From assembly GCF_001194135.2 (NCBI RefSeq), contig NC_068999.1, forward strand, positions 3,211,781-3,275,780: a DNA stretch of 64,000 nt, given 5' to 3'. The DNA comes from Octopus bimaculoides (lineage: Eukaryota). A model generated the notes under the pieces. That model had not been told where the DNA came from, made no database searches, and saw nothing but the letters and a program-made list of their open reading frames with translations. Made by a program: the position numbers and the translations under genes. Shown here piece after piece: positions 2,640-50,299 of the stretch; the stretch's first letter is position 1, and every line of letters begins with the position of its first letter.

Positions 2640-2790
2640 AACTACGAAATAATTAAGCCCTCGCTGTTCGCGTCTCTGTTCGCGCACCGCCCTTCCTAAT
2701 TGGAAAAGCAGGCAGGAGGTGTGGCCCGTTGGGAGACGACGTTAGAGTTGTCTGTCCTTGTTCGTTCTTATTCTCAAAATGGCGTAAGAC
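2640..2790 (+). promoter_or_regulatory. CpG-retaining promoter-like region
   Basis: Local CpG cluster (ctcgctgttcgcgtctctgttcgcgcaccgccc) in CpG-poor DNA, GC-box-like CCGCCC, reverse CCAAT (ATTGG ~2699) and YY1-like AAAATGGCG at 2776-2784, upstream of a donor-terminated ORF. Confidence 0.55.
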
Positions 2791-2852
2791 GGATCTCTTT
2801 CTGCCGACTTCACCACTTACATGGAGTACTCGTTTATTCAGTTGGTTTCATA

Positions 2853-2951
2853 ATGACCGAAAGGAAATTTCGTCAAGCTTTACAGAAAGTTGGATGTGCA
2901 GCAAAAGTTCGTGCAAATGTGTCTCAGGCTGTTCGAGAGAGCATCATTTCG
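2853..2951 (+). CDS. Candidate first coding exon (33 codons, phase-0 donor) of an unidentified spliced gene
   Basis: ATG at 2853, non-repetitive ORF MTERKFRQALQKVGCAAKVRANVSQAVRESIIS, consensus donor TCG|GTGAGT at 2952; follows the CpG-rich region. No homology recognised. Confidence 0.5.
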
Positions 2952-6390: not shown

Positions 6391-6770
6391 TCTTTTGACT
6401 GCAACCATGCTGGAGCACAGCCATTAGTCGAACAAATCGACCCCAGGACTTAGTCTTTGTAAGCCTAGTACTTATTCTATCGGCCTTTTTTGCCGAACCG
6501 TTAAGTTACAGGGACGTAAACACACCAACATCGGTTGTCAAACGATGGTGGGGGAGGAAACAAACACAGACACATATATATATATATATATCTATATATA
6601 TATATCTATATATATATATATATATACACACACACATGACTGGCTTCTTTCAGTTTCCGTCTACAGTAGAGGCTATAGTAGAAAACACTTGCCCGAGATG
6701 CCACGCAATGAGACTGAACCGGGAATCATGTGGTTGGGAAGCAAGTGTCTTACCACACAGCCATACCTGC
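6391..6770 (-). mobile_element. tRNA-headed SINE, family B, with central (TA)/(CA) microsatellite
   Basis: Reverse strand reads tggctgtgtggtaag...ggttcagtc(t/c)c... head; body cctagtacttattctatcgg...gacgtaaacacacc matches many other copies. Confidence 0.85.
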
Positions 6771-6804
6771 ACCAAATGTATACATGGTATATCCATGTAT
6801 ACGT

Positions 6805-7345
6805 TATCATCATAATTTAACGTCCGTTTTCCATGCCTGGCATGAGTTGGACAGTTTGACAGGAGCGAATGCAAGCCAGAGGACTGCACCAACTTTTGTC
6901 GTCTGCTTTGGTATGGTTTCTATGGCTGGATACCCTCCCCACTCAGTGTACTTACTGGGTTCCTTTTATGGTGGCGTCACCAGCACTGGCAGGGTCACCA
7001 GTTAACTTGCAAGACAAACACCTTTCAATTGGGGAGCAGTATTGAGGGAGGTGGCTTGGGGCCAGTTGACAGTTTAAAGCATTATAGCGGGATGGAGATA
7101 AGTGCCTTTCACAAACCATCCATTTATCCCTAACTTCCTCAGAGACCACCATATCACAGAATGAGTTACTCTGTCAAAAGTTTTCTTCAGGTCAATGAAT
7201 GCCAGGTACAATGGTTTAATTTTAGCTACATACTTCTGCAGGCGGGCCAGACCATTGCTAATGGGGGTCACCTAGTTGACCGGAACATTGTGTCAGTTGG
7301 TCAATCAGACCCTTGTCAGTGGAGTCACCAGGTGGACCTCTGGAC
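6805..7345 (-). mobile_element. Degenerate, internally deleted RTE-clade LINE (RT fragment plus 3' tail)
   Basis: Minus-strand translation KPLYLAFIDLKKTFDRVTHSVIWWSLRKLGI matches the non-LTR RT motif AF(I/V)DLxKAFDRV; adjacent tail ...ccaggcatggaaaacggacgttaaa. Confidence 0.8.
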
Positions 7346-25994: not shown

Positions 25995-26695
25995 CTTTTA
26001 CTTGTTTCATTTCTCAGACGGTGGCCATGCTGGGGCACCGCCATGAAGGGTTTTAGTCGAACAACTCGACTCCAGGACTTTTATTTATTTATTTTTTTTA
26101 AAGCCTAGTTCTTATTCCTTTACACGCTTTTGCCGAAATGCTAAGCTGCGGGGGATGTAAACACACCAACACCGATTGCTAAGTGGTGATGGGGAGACAA
26201 ACACAGACACAAAAACACACACTTGGTGACACTGCGGGTGCTGGTGGCACATAAAAAGCATCCAGTCCACACTGTTAAGTGGTTGGCATTTGGAAGGGCA
26301 TCCAGCTGTAAATAAGACAATGCCAAAACTGACCTCACCTGTGCTGGTGCCATGTAAAAAGCACTCGGTCCACTCTACAGGGTGGTTGGTATTAGGAAGG
26401 GCATCCTATCAGAAAAACCCTACCAAAAGGGACACAGTAGCCTAGGGTAGTTTCTATACCTGCCTGGCTCCTGTCAACTGTCCTACCCATGCATGCATGG
26501 AAGACGGACATTAAATGATGATGATGATGTATATACGACAGGCTTCTTTCAGTTTCCATCTACCAAATACACTCACAGAGCTTTGTTCAGCCCGAGGCTA
26601 TAGTAGAAGACACTTGCCCAAGGTGACACACAGTGGGACTGAACCTGGAACCATCTGGTTGGGAAGCGAGCTTCTTACTACACAGCCACACCCAC
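25995..26695 (-). mobile_element. SINE family B interrupted by a plus-strand family D element (~26222-26528)
   Basis: B 3' part at 25995-26220 and B head at 26529-26695, with a D element ending in (GAT)n between them. Confidence 0.75.
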
Positions 26696-28057
26696 ACCCA
26701 CATATCTATCTTTTACTTGTTTCAGTCATTAGACTGTGGCCATGCTGGAGCACTGCTTTAAAGAAAATTTTAGACAGTGAGATGAGTCTTCAACAGTAGA
26801 ATCCCAACAACCCAATGGATTATTCTAAAGTGATCATTCTTGGTGACTTTATTGTCATTGTTTAACCCCAGGTCAATCCTAATTGTACAGGTCTTTAATC
26901 AAATGGTTCTAGTCATGACTGTCCCATAGTGTACCTAGAGTTACATTGTCCACTGTATTCTGTCTTTATTAAGGTGGTAGCGTCTGATTGAGAGGAAAAT
27001 TGGTCGCTGTTTGGAGCAGATCAAGCAATGAAATAGTCGTTCGCAAATTGGTTTGACATTAGTGAAGATGGCGCCAGAGATGTTTAGAAGGGAAGTAATT
27101 TCTGATGAAGCCTTAGACAAGATGTGGTGGTAGTGGTGGGAGTAGATAGATTGTATGAGGAATGGTTTACAGTGAAGCGGAGGGGGTGGGGGTATTGCTT
27201 TATTGGTAACCAGGTGGGTGGGAAGGCAGTTGAAGGCTACTTGAACAGAGGTAATCAACGTTTTTACCTGAGGTAACCACAGAACAGATTGATTTATCTG
27301 TTCTGTTTAACATAACGAGAGATGTGATTTAATTTTCATTGTTAACAAATGTAATTAGAGCAATAATTTTAATTTCAGATAATTTCTTCTTGACTTTATA
27401 TCATCCAGCTGCAGGCATTGCCTTGGGCTAAATGAGCAAAACAGTACAACTCTGTTTGTCCAACACATCTTCTTTAATTATAGAAAACACTGTTTTCATC
27501 AGTTTTTGTCTCTTTACAATCTTTCCTCCTGATTCAATATTGCAGCTGCCATTGCGTTCTCTTGTGTTTACCGTGTCAATAAGTGTGTGTGTGTGCATTC
27601 ACACACACACACACGCACACACACACACACATGATGCAGCCATGCATACAAACACATGAATACATGTGAGTTTGTGCAATCAAACCAGAAAACAGTCAAT
27701 ATTATGAAAATGCAGTTTATTTACATTCAAGGTGAAAAATTCATCATGGCGTAATATACTAATTACTACAAACTTTGTTAGCAATCTTTAATTGAACTTG
27801 TAGCAGTTGAATTACTCAACTTGGAAGTACCTGTAAAATATCTAATGATGAGTGTGTGTGTGTATGTGTGTGCATATGTATGTCAACACACACACACACG
27901 TGTACACACACTTCTTTCCGCCACCTCTTCTCTTTCTTTTCTTTTTTTCTGATGGAGGACTAGTGTCCAAATCATTAATGATCCTGCCTTCAAGTATTAT
28001 ACTAATATCACCCTTTGTTAAAACTTCTCCCTTGGTTTTTTTCTTGTTTTTGCTCAT

Positions 28058-28098
<41 letters not shown>

Positions 28099-29871
28099 TT
28101 GAATTTATTGTGGGCTGAAACTTCACAAATCATTGAGTTCCTCATTGCCAATAATTATGTAAAGACCCGCCACAGGGTGTATCAATTTGTGAAGTTTCAC
28201 CTACCAAGATATCATTATATCACTCTACCTTTTGTATTGAGCTCTTTGTTCCTTGTTTACACTAATATGTATACATACATCAATGTGTTATATGTGCATA
28301 TATGTATATATGCACATACCTGCATTCGTATGTGTGTATATAGGAACATTGTTCAGCTGGAAATGCTTTGTTCAATGGAAAGTCACAATGTTTAAAAGTC
28401 AGTTGTATCACTCAAGTGTCTGTTTATTTTCAGTGTCGTGGACTCACACCTGAGGTAAATACTCTATACACACACAACACATTTCTCTATCGGTGTTGTC
28501 TCTTGGTTGGCTGTTTGTGTCTCTTTGTTGCTTCTTGGCTAATGTAAATATATTTGTTTATGGAGAGCGAGTGTGGGGCGAAGGAGAAAGTGCATGTGTA
28601 CGCAAGAAAGTTGAACTGCAAGTTTTGTACACAAATGCATTTGTATATATATATATATAGATGTGTGCGTGTGTGTGTGTATGTATGTATGTATTCATAT
28701 GGGTACACACTACTGATGGAAGTGTTTCTATGTACCAGTCATACATATCTGGGGTGTGTGATCTTCAGGTTTTTTTTGTTTTTGTTTTTTATTTATGCCA
28801 AGAGAAAGTCTGTGAATGATGAAAATTAAATCAAAGCATGAACCGTACTCAGTATTGTGAAAGCTGTACCATTATTTTGCTGTAAAAGACCAGCTGCTGT
28901 TGTTCTTCCAATGTCTGTGTGCATGACTGCTCAGTGGCCTGCATGTCATCATCTTACCATTTCCAGATATTCCATTTTGTAAAAGAAATTCTTAAGAAAT
29001 TATTTAAAAATGTAATTGAATGAACTGCTAAAGTTTTTAATCTGAAGTGATGTTAGATTGTTGGAAGTTATAAGCTTAAATTCTTTATGTGTGTATATAT
29101 GTGTGTGTGTATTGTTTTTAGATGGTTTCTTTGTTTCTTAAACTTTATATGAATGTCTTTAACTCTCTTATTTTTTAACCATTCTGTTTTTTTTTACATC
29201 CTGTTTGTGGCACCAACACCACTTTATATTTTTCTTCAGCTTTTTTTTTAGGTTCTATTTTTTTTTTTTTTCTATTTCTTCCATTACTTTTTCTTTGGGT
29301 CTCTTCATTGATTATGTTTCATAATAATGAAGAATTGGTCTTCACTGTTTTCCAGGATACACACACATTCTCTTCTCCCCAATGAAATACATTGAATTCT
29401 TTGGCATGCTATGAATTTTCTTGATGTAATTTTATTCCTTTATTCACAGCACCATTCTAAGAATGCAAAGACCTGCTGTCACTTTATTGCTAGAATAATA
29501 AAATCCAACATTAATTTAATTTGAATTGCATTAAAAAATCATCCAAAATGAACAAAACTGTCTCACTGTTTTGTTGACCTTCCTTTAACTAATACCAAAG
29601 CTTTCACCCAATTAGGCAAAGATTTAATTAAATAATCAATGATTGACTGAGCCATGTTTACTCATTCCTCAGTCGATGCTTCTGTTCTCTAATTGATGGG
29701 ATTTTGGCTGATCTTCCTTGCAGCCTTCTCTCAAAATATTCTTCTGTGTTCTATTGGAGTAAGATTGGGTATTTGAACAATTCAGTTCAGCGATTCAGTT
29801 CTGTGAATTCTTTTCCAAACTTGTGATACCTTGTTTGTATGATATGGGGCATTCCATCAACTAAATTGATA

Positions 29872-31257: not shown

Positions 31258-32959
31258 GTTTAAATGAATAAAAGCTCTTTGGTGGTTGTTATGCCCTCTA
31301 ACACTAAAACGAAAGCACATTATGCACCGGGCTGCAAATATGAGAATATGGCATGCACGAGACTCTTGACCCATGAGTCACTTTGTAACTTCTGCCAATT
31401 TTAAAAATAAAATATACACATGTATTGAGTTCTATCTATCATGTTTGTACTACTAAACCTATAAATGTGTGTGTGTCTATATATTATTTACTTTTCCATT
31501 AAGGTTAGATCGATACAAAAACTACTCCAGCTAGTGAGCGATAAATATTATTTATTTATTTATATGGTGTACATATATATGAACACACACAAACACACAC
31601 ACACACACACATATTTGCATGTGGTTGTCTTGGTACATTGCTTTAGTTGGTAGCGATGGGACCCTAACTTATTGAAGTGAACCCTGTCCCCTCCTGTTTA
31701 CTACTTCTAATCACAATATGAAGAAGAATGTGTTCTTTTATTCTCTGTATTTCTTTTCTTCTACAAATGGTTCTCTAAATGGTAAACCCCTGTATTGTTA
31801 TCCAGATTCTTAATAAATCGTATCTTACAATTGTTACAAACGTTCTTGTAAAACGGTAAATGGTACCTGTAATCATTATTGAGATTTCTAAAATGTGAGA
31901 AGCATTGAATGCAGCTGATCAATAATCTATTAGCTAACTGTCTTTGAGTGAAAACATACAACTGGTGCCAGCCACCACAGAATCTTCAGTTTGGAACATT
32001 CTTTAGTTGTGTGTGTGAAAGAGAGAATTTTCTTGTATATCTTTTGTATATTGAGATTATAGAAAGGAGTGTGGAGGTGGAGGTGTGGTGTAATGTCTGG
32101 TTTTGGAATTTATCAATTGGAAACAGACCAAAGTGAATGGAGAAGCTGAATGAAATAGGACGAAAGCAGCACCAAATTACTAGTTCCATCTCCCTATGTC
32201 AGTACACCAAACTGATATCATATTAATGATAATAATCAACCTTTTCAAAAAATTTTTCTTTCTTTTTATTTTCTTTTTTTTTTTTGCTTTCTTTCAATGT
32301 CAGCTTTTCTAGCATTTTGCTGCAGCTTTTTTTTATTTTTATTTTTTTAATAATTTTTTTTTTTTTTGTCAGTTTTATTCTTTAATCAATACCCTTCTAG
32401 ACCTGAAGAGACAAGTTCAATTTCTATAATAGCTTAAACTTGTCTTATAGTTATTGTCTCATTGCTACTAGAGATCTAAAGTGCTGTAAAAATATTTTTT
32501 CACTGGATTAAGAATTCCTGGTGTTGTGTGGCCTTTTTTTTTTTTTTTTTGTAGAATATCCAATCTGTTATGTTTCTGTGGTGCCATTATGTTTTGGTTA
32601 GACTGTTCTCAGTCTGTGTTTCCTCCTCCTCTTCCTCCTCCTCCTCCTGACTTCACTGGTCTCAGGGTTGTGAAGGCCTTGACAAAATACTCTCACTGTG
32701 ATTTAGCATTCTGAAGCTTGATATTGATTTCTGATCAAAGGAATTATCAAGAATCCTTGTAGGTGTCTCTGCTGTAGTTTTGGTGACGACTGAGTTCTTC
32801 CAAACTGATTTCCCCAATGTCACATGACATCAAGCTGCTATTTCATTGGCTGTGTCCTACGACTATAGATTATGGGATGTTATTTGAGCTTCAAGTGTCT
32901 GAAGCTGTTGTTGTTGCAAGGGTTGTGGTGTGGCCAGAGTGAGGTTTCTGTGGAATATG

Positions 32960-34035: not shown

Positions 34036-34147
34036 TCCTCTCTATCTTTTTCTCTCTCCCTCTTTTTTTCTCCCTCCCTCTTTTCTCTCTCCCTTTTTCT
34101 CTCTAATCACATGATGGCTTTACCAATGGGCTAAGTAACAGAATGAT

Positions 34148-34325
34148 TATAAGATAATGATTTCAAATTTTGGCACAGGGCCGGCTATTTCGGGGGAGAG
34201 AGGTAAGTTGATTCCATCTACCCCAGTACTCAACCGGTACTCATTTTATGAACACTGAAAGGATAACTCGACCTCGGTGGAATCTGAACTCAGAAAAATG
34301 AAGACAAACAAAATGCTGCTAAGCT
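34148..34325 (-). mobile_element. SINE family A
   Basis: Reverse complement of the family A body. Confidence 0.75.
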
Positions 34326-34974
34326 CACCACCTTAATAATAATAACAACAATAATATTAATAATAATAATAATAATAATAATCACCTGGATTATTATCCT
34401 TATTTTTTATCAATTTCTCAGTTCTTGATAAAAGTTTCCAAAATCTGTAAATCAATATTTCTCCATGCATCTATTTTCCTCAAAGACCTGCTCAGTCAAC
34501 TGTTGTGGTACCTGCCACGATTGAACCAAGCTTATTATCTCTGTATCACATGTTGATGCCCGAAGTCAGTTTCTCTCTGTAAACCACAGCCTATTGGAAT
34601 TCAAGTGAAAGTAGGAGGCTGGTTTCCAAGAGAGGAACAGAGCTCTCTCGCAGGAATTTAGATAAAAGTAATAGTCACATGCCGAAGGTTATGAAAGTTC
34701 TGTGGATGAGACAGATATCTATATTGGGATCTGTATTGATTTCCATATGGCTGTCGATACAGATATCTGTATCAACGTCGATATTGATAAGATATGTAAG
34801 TGTAGCAAACCTTATACTGTGCCTACCTGCTGGTCTTTGGTCTTTCCTTATCCTATCCAGAATATCATATTCTCCTTTTCTGAATTCCTGCTATTGAAGT
34901 GAGATCTTTATCAAATTATTTCCTTTACATCCTCATGGCCGACAGTGTTTTCAGTGCTGCCATCTTCAGTAGTA

Positions 34975-35495
34975 CTCTTTTACTTATTTCAGACTGTGGC
35001 CATGTTGGAGCACTACCTTAAATCGAGGAAATCGACTCCAAGATTTATTCTTTGTAAGCCTAGTACTTATTCTATCGGTCGCTTTTGCCGAACTGCTAAG
35101 TTACGGGGACGTAAACACACCAGCATTGGCTGTCAAGCAATGTTGGGNNNNNNNNNNNNNNNNNNNNNNNNNNNNNNNNNNNNNNNNNNNNNNNNNNNNN
35201 NNNNNNNNNNNNNNNNNNNNNNNNNNNNNNNNNNNNNNNNNNNNNNNNNNNNNNNNNNNNNNNNNNNNNNNNNNNNNNNNNNNNNNNNNNNNNNNNNNNN
35301 NNNNNNNNNNNNNNNNNNNNNNNNNNNNNGAGACAAACACAGACACACACATATATATACATATACATATATACAATGGGCTTCTTTCAATTTCCGTCTA
35401 CCAAATCCACTCACAAGGCTTTGGTTGGCCCGAGGCTATAGTAGAAGACACTTGCCCAAAGCGCCACGCAGTATGACTGAACCCGGAACCATGCA
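34975..35495 (-). mobile_element. SINE family B with an N gap in its central microsatellite
   Basis: Both halves match family B. Confidence 0.85.
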
Positions 35496-35789
35496 GTTCA
35501 AGTTATTCTCATGAAACCTAAACAAGTGGAGGGAGCATAGTACGCTTTCATATTTTAAAGTGTTTGTCTCCTTTGAACTGTATTTGTTTATCAACAACTG
35601 ACCCCATTAGAGGAATCACCAACTTGTGTCTTTAATGACCAATTGTTTTTTTTTTCTGAGTAGCCTCTGGTCAGTTCAGATTCAACAGATCTGTGCATTT
35701 ATCATCGTAGATATTCTTGTTGTGACCATCTCTCCTTTTAAATATTTTGGGCAACATTGTCTGATGTTTGTTTTTAGTTGAGACAGTAA

Positions 35790-41745: not shown

Positions 41746-42993
41746 ATAATGATAATATATACATATATATAAATGTCCAACCATTGAAGTTTTATTCCTG
41801 GTAAATATATTTGCAAAGATTTTATTTGGAAAATTCTATAACTTTTCTCAAAAATATCTATAAATGACACTGGTCTCTGATCAGTGTGACTTAAAGATTC
41901 TAAGAAAGAATCAAAGAACGGTGAATGAGATCAAAATCAACAACTCAACAATTACACACACACACACACACACACGGAGTTCACTATTGAACAGTCTTCA
42001 CAATAAATGGTGTCTCTCTTATCTGTTTTTTTTATCTTGATTCTAAATAGAATATTTAAATCTTCTAATTTGTTTCTGTAATAAAACCTAATAAAAACTG
42101 TTTAATGCTGAATTGATAAATTTCCTGTTTTTCTCTGAGATATTCTGAAAATGTCTCTGAGCTGTTATCTTGACAAAATGTTGTTGATATTCCTTACAGT
42201 ATTCTTGTTCAGTTATTTACATTGTATTTTAGGTTTGGTGCTAGTTTCATGTGTTTTGTTATTATATTTCACATGTATTCCATTTATGAATTTCAACTAT
42301 TTCTTGGGGGTTTGTTTTTCCATTGTTTTCCCAATATGATTATCTTGTTTGACTTTTATCAGAGAAGCATCAGTAGAAAGGACTATGGCAGGAGATCTCA
42401 ACTAAATGTTACACCATATTTAATTTCAACTCTCTTCATATAAAGTTTAGATATCACTGGAACCAGCTTAGCCTTTCTTTAAAATAGATACCAGTAATAC
42501 AATGCGGTTGATTGAATAGACAAACCTTTTGCCTTGTAACCTTTGTGTCAAGAGTTTAGGGATTGTACATACCAGGGATGGTCNNNNNNNNNNNNNNNNN
42601 NNNNNNNNNNNNNNNNNNNNNNNNNNNNNNNNNNNNNNNNNNNNNNNNNNNNNNNNNNNNNNNNNNNNNNNNNNNNNNNNNNNNNNNNNNNNNNNNNNNN
42701 NNNNNNNNNNNNNNNNNNNNNNNNNNNNNNNNNNNNNNNNNNNNNNNNNNNNNNNNNNNNNNNNNNNNNNNNNNNNNNNNNNNNNNNNNNNNNNNNNNNN
42801 NNNNNNNNNNNNNNNNNNNNNNNNNNNNNNNNNNNNNNNNNNNNNNNNNNNNNNNNNNNNNNNNNNNNNNNNNNNNNNNNNNNNNNNNNNNNNNNNNNNN
42901 NNNNNNNNNNNNNNNNNNNNNNNNNNNNNNNNNNNNNNNNNNNNNNNNNNNNNNNNNNNNNNNNNNNNNNNNNNNNNNNNNNNNNNNNNNNNN

Positions 42994-43110
42994 CTACCAA
43001 ATCCACTCACAAGGTTTTGGTCGGCCTGAGACACTTGCCCAAGGTGCCACGCAGTGGGACTGAACCCGGAACCATGTGGTTGGTAAGCGAGCTACTTACC
43101 ACACAGCCAC
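42994..43110 (-). mobile_element. SINE family B head
   Basis: ctaccaaatccactcacaagg...gggactgaacccggaaccatgtggttggtaagcgagctacttaccacacagccact. Confidence 0.85.
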
Positions 43111-46477: not shown

Positions 46478-46635
46478 TGGACTTCGTTCTTTCGGTTTCT
46501 TTCCACCAGATCCACTCACAAGGCTTTGGTTGGCCTGAGGCTTTAGTAGAAGACACACTTGCCCAAGGGACCATGCAGAGGGACTGAACCCAGAGCTATG
46601 TGCTTGAGAAGCAAACTTCTTACCCCACAGCCACG
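46345..46635 (-). mobile_element. SINE family B
   Basis: Body and head match family B; central (CA)n. Confidence 0.8.
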
Positions 46636-46983
46636 TCTGTACATCACTGTTGATGTAACAAGAATTTAAATATCTTACTCAAGGTTTTGGAATGGAAACT
46701 TTTCTGTTTCAAAATCCCAGCTTTTCTGTTTCAAAATCCTCTGCTCCTCTTTCTCATTTATTTTCTTTCGTCCCTTGAAGAGAGGAGGGTCCCATCAGTT
46801 CAAAAGTGCTGCAAACACTCTCTCCTATGACACAGCCTCCTTTGCCTGGTTCACTCCACAAAACAGCGCAGATTATAACTAAATTCTTTCTGTACTTTAT
46901 TGTTGATGTAAGAAATTGTTTTATTAATTAATCTTTATGTAATTATTGGTTGTAACTGATAGCATTGAGATATTCTGCCGTGA

Positions 46984-47063
46984 CTAATGAGTCTGTCTCC
47001 CTTTTATTTTCCCTTTTAGGTAAGTGAAGTTTTGTTTTATTATGAAGCTCTACAACTGTAAGT
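46984..47063 (+). promoter_or_regulatory. Candidate recursive splice site with 38-nt RS-exon
   Basis: Branch-like CTAAT (46984-46988), ~25-nt pyrimidine tract, TAG|GTAAGT (47017-47025), second GTAAGT at 47058-47063. Confidence 0.55.
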
Positions 47064-47226
47064 ATTCTAATTACTTCCTAATTAACCATCAGGCCAATGT
47101 AAACAAGACTGCAACAGTGAATGAATGCCACAGCACAGCCAGCACCGAGATTTGAAACCGTATCATGCTGATTAATCTCAGCATCTCTGTACTTAGAGAG
47201 TAAGACCGAAATTAGTAACTGCATGT

Positions 47227-47261
<35 letters not shown>

Positions 47262-47274
47262 GTATATATATATG

Positions 47275-47331
<57 letters not shown>

Positions 47332-48036
47332 TTATATATATATATGAATGACATATATGTTTGTGTAAGATTTTTTTCTGTCATACAATAATATACACAC
47401 CCTGATACATACACACTCACATTTATGATAAAAAAAAATTGGTCTATAAATATTCACNNNNNNNNNNACACACTCACATTTATGATAAAAAAAAATTGGT
47501 CTATAAATATTCACTATCTCAATAAACCTCAGTATTTTGATGTCTTCTGTAACACTTGGAAAAAGTATTGCACACACATACACACACACACAGAGAAGCT
47601 TGTGTGTGCATGTAGGGTAGAGATAGTGGTCACGTGTTAATTCAGTGGGATGGGGGGGGGGAGATGAAGGTGAGGTTTTCTCTAAGTTGAATATTAATAT
47701 TTTTGTATTCTTCTTGCTGTCAAAACCAAAAGCAGTATTGAGAAAAAAGTGATTGTTGAGTGTTTGAGAAGTAATTTAAGGCCAAACCAGCTGGGTTCAC
47801 GGACCAGATTCTAAACTTCTGACAAGTTCATAAATCAAAACATCACTGATTTAAAACACGGATGATGATGATTATGATGATGATGATAAACTCAATTGTG
47901 TTTTTTGATGACTCCCCCCTCCACATTTTCTTTTGTTCCATTGCTTATTCTGAAAATGCTTTGCCAAGTTGTTGAAGACTCTTTTGTCCTGGGGCAGTGC
48001 CAGGCAGAATGTTTCCATTGTTGACATCACTATCTT

Positions 48037-48251: not shown

Positions 48252-48385
48252 ATGGGTTTCTTTCAGTTTCCATCTACCAAATCCATTTCACAAGGCTTTG
48301 GTTGGCCCTGGGCTGTATATAGTAGAAGACACTTGCCCAAGGTGCCATGCAGTGGGACTGAACCCAGAACCATGTGGCTGGCAGG
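48037..48385 (-). mobile_element. SINE family B
   Basis: Near full-length copy with central (CA)n. Confidence 0.85.
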
Positions 48386-49066
48386 CAAACTCCAAATTCT
48401 ACACACCCGAGGTTCAGACATTTTCTTACTGTAATTTCATTCATTATGTTTGTGTGGTTGTTGTTGTTGTTGTTGTTAATTTGCCTCTCCAAGGTTAGAG
48501 TTTAGAAAAGGCTTGTCTATAATATGTTTNNNNNNNNNNNNNNNNNNNNNNNNNNNNNNNNNNNNNNNNNNNNNNNNNNNNNNNNNNNNNNNNNNNNNNN
48601 NNNNNNNNNNNNNNNNNNNNNNNNNNNNNNNNNNNNNNNNNNNNNNNNNNNNNNNNNNNNNNNNNNNNNNNNNNNNNNNNNNNNNNNNNNNNNNNNNNNN
48701 NNNNNNNNNNNNNNNNNNNNNNNNNNNNNNNNNNNNNNNNNNNNNNNNNNNNNNNNNNNNNNNNNNNNNNNNNNNNNNNNNNNNNNNNNNNNNNNNNNNN
48801 NNNNNNNNNNNNNNNNNNNNNNNNNNNNNNNNNNNNNNNNNNNNNNNNNNNNNNNNNNNNNNNNNNNNNNNNNNNNNNNNNNNNNNNNNNNNNNNNNNNN
48901 NNNNNNNNNNNNNNNNNNNNNNNNNNNNNNNNNNAAGGAAGTGGCTGAAAGGGTGGGGTTTCAATGGTTAATGTTTAATTTGAATTATGATCTGGTGTGG
49001 GTGTGTATGTTAGTGAGCCTGTATGCATGTAATAATAATAATGTACATGTGTTTGTGTGAGGAGAT

Positions 49067-49630: not shown

Positions 49631-49848
49631 AAGACGGTAGCAAGCTGGCAGAAGCAGTACCGCACCAGAAAAAATGCTTAGCAGTATTTCTTCCAACTTT
49701 ATATTCTGAGTTCAAATGCCACTGGAGTTAACTTTGCCTTTTACCTTTTTGGGGGTCAATAAAATAAGTACCAGTTACGTACTGAGGTCGATGTAATTGA
49801 CTTACCTCTTCTTCTGAAATTGCTGGCCTTGTGCCAAGAATTGAAACC
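49631..49848 (+). mobile_element. SINE family A
   Basis: agctggcagaa...gagttcaaat...aaataagtaccagtt...ggccttgtgcc. Confidence 0.85.
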
Positions 49849-50299
49849 ATTATGATATACTCTTTTGTTAACTCAATGTCTTATGCATTATCACTGCTAT
49901 AATGATATTCACTATTCTTAATATAATTCTATTATTAACCGACATGCTCACCATGCTTCTGGGACATGTTCTACCTGGCCTTCATTTTCACTGATTTGTG
50001 GGTTGACCAGGTGTGTATGGTTTTGACAAGAGAGGAATCAGTTTGTAACTAATGAAGATTCTTTTCCTTGTGGTGGATATTTGTATTTGTGGACAGTGGA
50101 ATTTCACACTGGAGCACAGTAGCAGAATTTCTAAACTCAGTGTGGACATCCCAGATATTTAGTGAAATCTTTGGTTCACTGCTGACCATTCTTAGATGAT
50201 CTGGTACCTATTGTCAACAAATGGTTGAACTGAGACCAATATAAACTTCAATTTTACCTTCGAACAGTGTTCCACTAGTTATACTGGAAGGAAGATTTG

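What the first reader, a model, noticed from the sequence alone, without database searches (positions are those of the whole stretch)
46984..47063. Consensus recursive splice site with RS-exon, ~44 kb into the putative intron
Seen: branch-like CTAAT about 32 nt upstream, pyrimidine tract gtctgtctcccttttattttccctttt, AG directly followed by perfect GTAAGT, and a second perfect GTAAGT 38 nt later. The 38-nt segment is open only in phase 0 (VSEVLFYYEALQ), the same phase as the 2951 donor. Known: AG|GTAAGT sites followed by a short cryptic exon are the recursive-splicing architecture of long Drosophila and vertebrate introns. Inference: recursive splicing, or a coding exon with competing donors, in a cephalopod gene; I do not know of this being characterised in molluscs.
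Basis: partly seen in the sequence, partly recalled or inferred. Interest (0 to 1): 0.7.

Follow-up and report, generated by a model that had tools for sequence, protein, structure and literature searches.

The report
Candidate recursive splice site in octopus
A very strong back-to-back "end-of-intron / start-of-intron" signal followed by a 38-base cryptic exon sits in unique DNA inside what is probably a giant intron of an octopus gene; it has every sequence hallmark of recursive (stepwise) intron removal, but no RNA or cross-species evidence could be obtained, so it stays a good candidate and not a finding.

Summary
The sequence is as described. ACTAAT lies 32 nt upstream of a 24/27 pyrimidine tract. 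Then come TTTTAG|GTAAGT at 47019/47020, a 38-nt segment, and a second GTAAGT at 47058.

The bare AGGTAAGT is at chance level (3 seen, 2.2 expected), and the other two copies lie in repeat elements. The full composite is expected only about 1e-5 to 4e-4 times per strand of this window. It is the only such site in 132 kb of octopus DNA examined on both strands. It is unique sequence, not a repeat.

The gene context needs correcting. Exon 2853-2951 is a real coding exon: against Octopus vulgaris it shows 7 synonymous and 1 conservative change. In the O. vulgaris gene model its donor joins a 21-nt micro-exon at 28434-28454, then an exon at 31806. It is not followed by a single intron of more than 44 kb.

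The exon-1 peptide resembles DOCK9/DOCK11 N-termini. No later coding exon is in the window, so the gene probably runs beyond 64000. That would put the site 18.6 kb into the next long intron.

All sequence-level criteria for a ratchet point with an RS-exon are met. Use by the spliceosome and conservation could not be tested. Verdict: plausible recursive splice site (about 0.4), a new member of a known kind, of moderate interest.

The parts
46983..46988 (+). Branch-point-like ACTAAT; presumed branch A at 46987, 32 nt upstream of the acceptor G
   Evidence: read directly
46991..47017 (+). Polypyrimidine tract, 24 of 27 pyrimidines, with TT at -5/-6
   Evidence: it is the only AGGT site on the + strand with >=22/25 pyrimidines
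47018..47025 (+). Juxtaposed acceptor and donor AG|GTAAGT, the putative ratchet point; the splice junction lies between 47019 and 47020
   Evidence: it is the only one of three AGGTAAGT sites in the window that is not inside a repeat copy
47020..47057 (+). 38-nt putative cryptic RS-exon; its length is not a multiple of 3, so inclusion would shift the reading frame
47058..47065 (+). Downstream donor ACT|GTAAGTAT, the putative RS-exon 5' splice site, with 8 contiguous bases complementary to U1
   Evidence: the U1 pairing rests on established knowledge of the U1 5' end
2853..2951 (+). First coding exon (33 codons, phase-0 donor TCG|GTGAGT) of the host gene; its peptide resembles DOCK9/DOCK11 N-termini
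   Evidence: 97% identical to residues 1-33 of O. vulgaris CAI9736701.1. Differences from O. vulgaris are 7 synonymous and 1 non-synonymous, P = 2e-4. tblastn E = 2.8e-4 with a DOCK9 N-terminus recalled from memory.
28434..28454 (+). 21-nt micro-exon (CRGLTPE), ttttcag|...GAG|gtaaat; a possible upstream partner whose end would regenerate GAG|GTAAGT
   Evidence: the splice sites and flanks are 94-97% identical in O. vulgaris
31806..31925 (+). Counterpart of the last CDS exon of the O. vulgaris model. The DNA is 95% conserved, but the reading frame is broken here by TAA at 31857 and TGA at 31896

Best explanation
The site is a recursive splice site (ratchet point) with a 38-nt cryptic RS-exon, in a long sense-strand intron of an octopus gene. 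That gene's first coding exon is 2853-2951 and it is probably the DOCK-D/zizimin-type orthologue.

Proposed mechanism, every step inferred:
1. The 38-nt unit is recognised by exon definition. U2AF/U2 bind the ACTAAT branch point, the 24/27 pyrimidine tract and TTTTAG; U1 binds ACT|GTAAGTAT at 47058.
2. The upstream exon is ligated to 47020. That exon is the micro-exon ending GAG at 28454, or exon 1 ending TCG at 2951. This step removes an 18.6-kb or a 44-kb segment as a lariat branched near 46987.
3. Ligation regenerates a consensus donor, GAG|GTAAGT or TCG|GTAAGT, at the junction.
4. This donor competes with the 47058 donor. When it wins, the 38 nt are removed together with the rest of the intron (more than 16.9 kb, running beyond the window), leaving no trace in the mRNA.
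5. When the 47058 donor wins, a frame-shifting 38-nt exon is included and the mRNA is expected to be degraded by nonsense-mediated decay.
For: Motif: branch point, 24/27 pyrimidine tract, TT at -5/-6, AG|GTAAGT. Duff et al. [quoted passage not shown]

RS-exon: a perfect donor lies 38 nt downstream and the length is out of frame. [quoted passage not shown]

Rarity: the composite is expected about 1e-5 to 4e-4 times per strand-window, and it is unique in 132 kb on both strands. It is not a repeat: 46640-47225 has no copy in the window or in L001.

Context:
- Exon 1 is under purifying selection.
- The only annotated continuation has a non-conserved ORF.
- Pfam finds nothing credible in any of 605 open fragments of at least 40 aa on either strand, and there is no DOCK-like second exon in the window. 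So the gene most likely continues past 64000.
- Both O. vulgaris gene models here are on the + strand.
- AT skew is negative in 30 of 32 2-kb bins.

The 18.6-kb segment from the micro-exon falls within the range of Drosophila recursive segments (2.6-63.6 kb, mean 18 kb). A very strong cryptic exon inside an intron of a constrained gene is tolerable only if something removes it again, and the regenerated donor does exactly that.
Against: There is no RNA evidence of any kind: no junctions, lariats or saw-tooth coverage. There is no conservation test either, because the O. vulgaris locus fetched ends at window position ~39.3 kb.

The site lies outside the CDS range of the gene model that uses the 2951 donor, which ends at 31925. 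It may instead sit in, or beyond, a second weak 170-aa model that starts at about 34747. Sense-strand intronic location is therefore inferred.

The DOCK-D identity rests on query sequences recalled from memory and got no support from Pfam or PDB.

The two competing donors are of similar strength: 8 contiguous U1 base pairs each when the upstream exon ends GAG. So skipping is not guaranteed.

The 25.5-kb intron 1 has no comparable site, so there is no independent sign that this gene uses recursive splicing. Recursive splicing has not been reported in molluscs.
Confidence: 0.42

Rival explanations
1. The signals are a non-functional coincidence. They exist in the DNA but the spliceosome does not use them to any meaningful degree. 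Possible reasons: the region is not transcribed on the + strand, it lies between two genes, or silencers suppress it, as with most deep-intronic pseudo-exons.
For: The core 8-mer is at chance level. The site is outside the CDS range of the annotated O. vulgaris model. No homologue, RNA family or coding signal is attached to it.
Against: The joint rarity of branch point, tract, AG|GTAAGT and a second GTAAGT at exon-like spacing. It is unique among all sites in 132 kb on both strands, and stronger than the real splice sites of the micro-exon and exon 3, neither of which passes the same thresholds. + strand transcription units are present on the upstream side.
Confidence: 0.33
2. It is a conventional short alternative or poison exon with tandem donors. 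The 3' splice site at 47019 and the donor at 47058 define a real 38-nt cassette that appears in some mRNAs of the DOCK-like gene or of the second + strand model. The exon merely happens to begin with GTAAGT.
For: The exon-definition unit is complete and strong. The 47058 donor has 8 contiguous U1-complementary bases, not weaker than the regenerated donor. The locus already shows one micro-exon and one exon with a non-conserved ORF, so unproductive or alternative exons occur here. PMC6224609 (listed) reports that many annotated exons are RS-exons.
Against: A 38-nt exon shifts the frame. The chance that an exon starts with exactly GTAAGT is about 1 in 4000. If it does, the regenerated donor will compete anyway, so this rival shades into recursive splicing with partial inclusion.
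Confidence: 0.17
3. The signal belongs to a mobile element or to the opposite strand, for example a repeat family that carries splice-like motifs, as the other two AGGTAAGT copies do.
For: The sites at 34201 (+) and 49807 (-) are copies of one interspersed repeat that contains AGAGGTAAGT. A SINE copy lies at 46502-46634 and a TA microsatellite at 47227-47350.
Against: 46640-47225 has no similar copy in the window or in 68 kb of O. vulgaris DNA, although the SINE families recur many times there. The reverse strand of the site shows no splice-like or coding feature.
Confidence: 0.05

Closest known systems
Drosophila intronic ratchet points with cryptic RS-exons (Ubx, kuz, Bx; Duff et al. 2015; Joseph et al. 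2018/2021, PMC8605326)
   Same: Long pyrimidine tract with TT at -5/-6, AG|GTAAGT, a short out-of-frame cryptic exon ended by a second donor, a location tens of kb into a long intron, and a segment size of about 18 kb.
   Different: No junction, lariat or conservation evidence here. The taxon is a mollusc. The downstream donor is as strong as the regenerated one, whereas in the fly cases tested the ratchet-point donor is usually the stronger.
Vertebrate RS-exons in long neuronal genes (Sibley et al. 2015, from my own knowledge; Blazquez et al. 2018, PMC6224609)
   Same: An RS-exon is defined first, then the reconstituted 5' splice site competes with the RS-exon donor. Inclusion gives an unproductive mRNA. 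The host would be a long gene, probably expressed in neurons.
   Different: Vertebrate RS-exons are often longer and many are annotated exons. Here nothing is annotated at the site and expression is unknown.
Deep-intronic pseudo-exons and poison exons (e.g. DMD pseudo-exons, PMC7175933)
   Same: A strong acceptor-donor pair enclosing a short frame-disrupting segment deep inside an intron.
   Different: Ordinary pseudo-exons do not begin with a consensus donor. The AG|GTAAGT juxtaposition is what sets this site apart.

Membership tests
Recursive splice site / ratchet point with RS-exon | [quoted passage not shown] | tested here: met
   TTTTAG|GTAAGT, 23/25 pyrimidines upstream, ACTAAT branch-like motif at -32. 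Criterion taken.
Recursive splice site / ratchet point with RS-exon | Short cryptic exon downstream, ended by a usable 5' splice site (~50 nt) and generally out of frame | tested here: met
   38 nt, then ACT|GTAAGTAT; 38 is not a multiple of 3. Criterion taken from PMC8605326.
Recursive splice site / ratchet point with RS-exon | Lies on the sense strand inside a long intron (11 kb or more in flies) | tested here: inconclusive
   Exon 1 is real and on the + strand. There is no further coding exon in the window. However, the O. vulgaris model using that donor ends its CDS at 31925, and a second + strand model starts near 34747 and has an unknown end.
Recursive splice site / ratchet point with RS-exon | The upstream exon end regenerates a functional donor after the first step | tested here: met
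   GAG|GTAAGT from the micro-exon, or TCG|GTAAGT from exon 1. Both have G at -1. Function is inferred from the consensus only.
Recursive splice site / ratchet point with RS-exon | The SA|SD core is conserved well above its flanks in related species | not testable with these tools
   The O. vulgaris locus L001 stops at window position ~39.3 kb. All routes to more sequence failed. At 89.5% identity a two-species comparison would in any case keep the 8-mer 41% of the time by chance.
Recursive splice site / ratchet point with RS-exon | Splicing intermediates: exon-to-ratchet-point junction reads, recursive lariats, saw-tooth nascent RNA coverage | not testable with these tools
   No RNA data are in reach.
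DOCK-D (DOCK9/10/11, zizimin) gene as host | N-terminal peptide RKFxxxLxKxGxAAxxRxxVSxAVRxS, followed by an exon containing EPLDYE, a PH domain, DHR1 and DHR2 | tested here: inconclusive
   Exon 1 matches human DOCK9/DOCK11 N-termini recalled from memory at 55% and 52% over 29 aa, E = 2.8e-4 and 1e-3. No later exon is in the window. Pfam and PDB give nothing for the 40-aa peptide.

The most novel reading that the evidence does not exclude
This is a working ratchet point in a giant 5' intron of an octopus DOCK-D-type gene. It would be the first recursive splice site documented in a mollusc or any lophotrochozoan. That would indicate that RS-exon-mediated stepwise intron removal goes back to the bilaterian ancestor and is used to process the unusually long introns of cephalopod neural genes.
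Probability: 0.4. Interest if true: 0.55.

Novelty: new member of a known kind. Interest (0 to 1): 0.42.

Why it matters
Recursive splicing has been shown in flies and vertebrates. The searchable literature holds no report for cephalopods or other molluscs. Octopus genes have very long introns and elaborate neural RNA processing. A validated ratchet point would extend the mechanism to a third major animal lineage. It would also give a sequence template (tract + TTTTAG|GTAAGT + a donor about 40 nt downstream) for a genome-wide search. If instead the site is unused, it shows how strong a splice-like composite can be without function. The corrected gene structure (real first exon, 21-nt micro-exon, non-conserved third exon) is also useful for re-annotating this locus.

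Tried and rejected
- Protein-database search with the exon-1 peptide, a nearby 118-aa ORF and the start of the second O. vulgaris model: no hits. The tool also missed the O. vulgaris protein that HMMER later found, so these negatives carry little weight.
- DOCK6/7 N-termini recalled from memory: no tblastn hit, dropped in favour of DOCK9/11.
- Pfam on all 605 stop-free fragments of at least 40 aa on both strands: only chance-level hits, E >= 6.7e-4.
- Rfam: 0 matches. tRNA scan: 0.
- Pfam and PDB on the exon 1 + micro-exon peptide: nothing.
- Exact look-ups of window ORFs near the site, to reach other assemblies or RNA-seq contigs: not on record.
- Metagenome scan for the motif: 0.
- Repeat origin of the site: rejected, as there are no copies.
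- The phase-0 openness as evidence: rejected as trivial.
- Sliding identity between the window and O. vulgaris as an exon detector: blocks of 97% identity are too common at this divergence to be informative.

Full report
**1. The observation**

ACTAATGAGTCTGTCTCCCTTTTATTTTCCCTTTTAG|GTAAGTGAAGTTTTGTTTTATTATGAAGCTCTACAACT|GTAAGTATTC

- CTAAT is at 46984-46988. The likely branch A, at 46987, is 32 nt from the acceptor G.
- The tract 46991-47017 is 24/27 pyrimidines.
- The acceptor AG is at 47018-19 and has T at -5 and -6.
- GTAAGT is at 47020-25, the 38-nt segment at 47020-57, and the second GTAAGT at 47058-63.
- The upstream exon, ATG 2853 to 2951|GTGAGT, is 33 codons with a phase-0 donor.
- The remark that the 38 nt are open only in phase 0 is true but uninformative. 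GTAAGTGA itself places TAA and TGA in the other two frames.

**2. Is it more than chance?**

The 8-mer AGGTAAGT alone is not enriched: 3 matches on both strands against 2.21 expected. GTAAGT is slightly depleted. The other two AGGTAAGT sites (34201 +, 49807 -) lie in two copies of one interspersed repeat and have purine-rich upstream sequence.

The composite is a different matter.
- On the + strand only 3 of 3105 AG dinucleotides are preceded by >=23/25 pyrimidines. Of 167 AGGT sites only this one reaches 22.
- In 40 Mb simulated from an order-3 Markov model of the window, the core occurs 0.31 times per window-strand, with >=20/25 pyrimidines 0.0046 times, and with >=23/25 never. About 2% of cores have a second GTAAGT within 100 nt.
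- Multiplying gives roughly 1e-5 to 4e-4 expected occurrences per strand of a 64-kb window, before counting the branch-point motif.
- As an empirical control I scanned the window and 68 kb of O. vulgaris DNA on both strands. No other AG|GTRAG site has >=20/25 pyrimidines plus a downstream donor. The candidate is the only + strand unit of strong acceptor plus GTRAGT within 200 nt.
- The real splice sites of this locus are weaker than the candidate.
- The segment 46640-47225 has no copy in the window or in the O. vulgaris locus, although SINE families recur many times there. So it is unique sequence, bounded by a SINE copy (46502-46634) and a TA microsatellite (47227-47350).

**3. What gene is this, and where is the site in it?**

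An exhaustive HMMER search with the 33-aa exon-1 peptide found one near-identical protein, P0001. This is CAI9736701.1, a 79-aa "hypothetical predicted protein" of Octopus vulgaris. Its locus (L001: OX597832.1 29,505,513-29,573,423, reversed) is collinear with window 1-39,335. Identity is 89.5% over 32.2 kb of aligned bases. The window therefore comes from an octopod close to, but distinct from, O. vulgaris.

Mapping P0001 onto the window gives three exons:
- Exon 1, 2853-2951.
- A 21-nt micro-exon, 28434-28454 (ttttcag|TGTCGTGGACTCACACCTGAG|gtaaat).
- A third exon starting at 31806, with the model's stop at 31923-25.

How well each is conserved:
- Exon 1 differs from O. vulgaris at 8 positions, 7 synonymous and one I/V (P = 2e-4 under neutrality). 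It is a genuine coding exon.
- The micro-exon and its flanks are 94-97% identical, with both splice sites intact.
- The third exon is 95% identical at the DNA level. In the window its frame is broken by TAA at 31857 and TGA at 31896. The C-terminal half of the 79-aa model is therefore not a conserved protein.

A constrained first exon whose only annotated continuation is unconstrained implies that the functional mRNA continues elsewhere. Pfam scans of all 605 stop-free fragments of at least 40 aa on both strands found nothing credible. So the next real coding exon is probably beyond 64000.

As a lead only: the exon-1 peptide (ERKFRQALQKVGCAAKVRANVSQAVRES) matches the N-termini of human DOCK9 (long isoform) and DOCK11, as I recall them, at 55% and 52% over 29 residues, with tblastn E = 2.8e-4 and 1e-3. 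The expected next motif, EPLDYE, is absent from the window. Pfam and PDB are silent on the short peptide.

A second O. vulgaris + strand model (170 aa, no Pfam hit) starts at L001:62804, which corresponds to window position ~34747, and runs off the end of the locus. I could not retrieve it, so its extent is unknown.

Consequence for the finding: the 2951 donor is not followed by one intron of more than 44 kb. The site is 44,068 nt from that donor, 18,565 nt from the micro-exon donor, and about 15 kb past the end of the annotated CDS. That it lies in a sense-strand intron is likely but inferred. The grounds are a + strand gene that must continue, + strand models, and T>A skew in 30 of 32 bins.

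**4. Mechanism proposed**

This is a ratchet point with an RS-exon.
1. Exon definition takes place across the 38 nt.
2. The upstream exon is ligated to 47020, which regenerates GAG|GTAAGT (from the micro-exon) or TCG|GTAAGT (from exon 1).
3. This donor competes with ACT|GTAAGTAT at 47058.
4. If the regenerated donor wins, the 38 nt leave with the rest of the intron. If not, a frame-shifting exon is included and the mRNA should be degraded.

All steps are inferred from sequence and from the fly and vertebrate models: PMC8605326, the abstract of PMC6224609, and 10.1101/006163. The match to published criteria is close:
- TT at -5/-6 (99.5% of fly ratchet points).
- A prominent pyrimidine tract.
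- An RS-exon of about 50 nt that is out of frame.
- Recursive segments of 2.6-63.6 kb with a mean of 18 kb.

The two donors are about equally complementary to U1, so partial inclusion is possible.

**5. Rivals**

- An unused chance composite (0.33). The site was picked after looking, and in a genome of a few Gb (size assumed) one to a few tens of such composites are expected by chance. Sense transcription is also unproven.
- A conventional alternative or poison 38-nt exon (0.17). This shades into recursive splicing with partial inclusion.
- Origin from a repeat or from the opposite strand (0.05), argued against.

**6. What could not be done**

- The O. vulgaris locus stops 7.7 kb (in window coordinates) short of the site, and every route to more cephalopod sequence failed.
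- Even with that sequence, one species at 10.5% divergence would keep the 8-mer 41% of the time by chance.
- No RNA data are available.

**7. Verdict**

The recursive-splicing reading meets every sequence-level criterion, but its two functional criteria (conservation and splicing intermediates) are untested, and its stated intron context had to be corrected.

Confidence in recursive splicing is about 0.42. If real, it is a new member of a known kind in a lineage where the searchable literature has no report of it. A specialist would find that interesting but not very surprising.

Noticed in passing
window 28434-28454 (+): A 21-nt micro-exon (CRGLTPE) joins exon 1 to the next exon in the O. vulgaris model. 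The exon and about 45 nt on each side are 94-97% identical between the two octopods, which is typical of regulated (neuronal) micro-exons.
   Followed up: partly
window 31806-31925 (+): This is the counterpart of the last coding exon of O. vulgaris CAI9736701.1. The DNA is 95% identical, but the window copy has in-frame stops (TAA 31857, TGA 31896). The 79-aa model is therefore probably an alternative terminal or poison-exon isoform, or a mis-model.
   Followed up: partly
window 2853-2951 (+): The exon-1 peptide resembles the N-terminus of DOCK9 (long isoform) and DOCK11 (RKF..L.K.G.AA..R..VS.AVR.S), with tblastn E = 2.8e-4 using sequences recalled from memory. The O. vulgaris annotation seems to have split this first exon off from the main gene.
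   Followed up: partly
window 2776-2784 and 2780-2855 (+): A YY1-like AAAATGGCG motif lies in a 97%-conserved block about 70 nt upstream of the start codon. There are two short upstream ORFs (ATGGCGTAA at 2780; ATG at 2821 ending in a TAA that overlaps the main ATG). This looks like a conserved promoter / 5' UTR.
   Followed up: no
window 34120-34300 (+) and 49710-49890 (-); L001 62206-62386: These are copies of one interspersed repeat that carries AGAGGTAAGT. They account for the other two AGGTAAGT matches in the window.
   Followed up: yes
L001 19482 (+), O. vulgaris intron 1: AG|GTAAGTAG preceded by 19/25 pyrimidines, in a stretch with no aligned counterpart in the window. It may be a lineage-specific weaker recursive-type motif, or an insertion.
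   Followed up: no
window 31502 (+) / L001 57071: AG|GTTAGA in the window against AG|GTAAGA in O. vulgaris, both behind an 18/25 pyrimidine tract, about 300 nt upstream of exon 3.
   Followed up: no
window 6545-6820, 26515-26800, 35390-35500, 42990-43110, 46502-46634, 48270-48400: Several copies of a SINE-like element, whose translation reads ...RRHLPKVPRSGTEPGTMW.... ARAGORN calls no tRNA and Rfam finds nothing. The window also has many N gaps and TA/CA microsatellites, so it is a draft assembly.
   Followed up: partly
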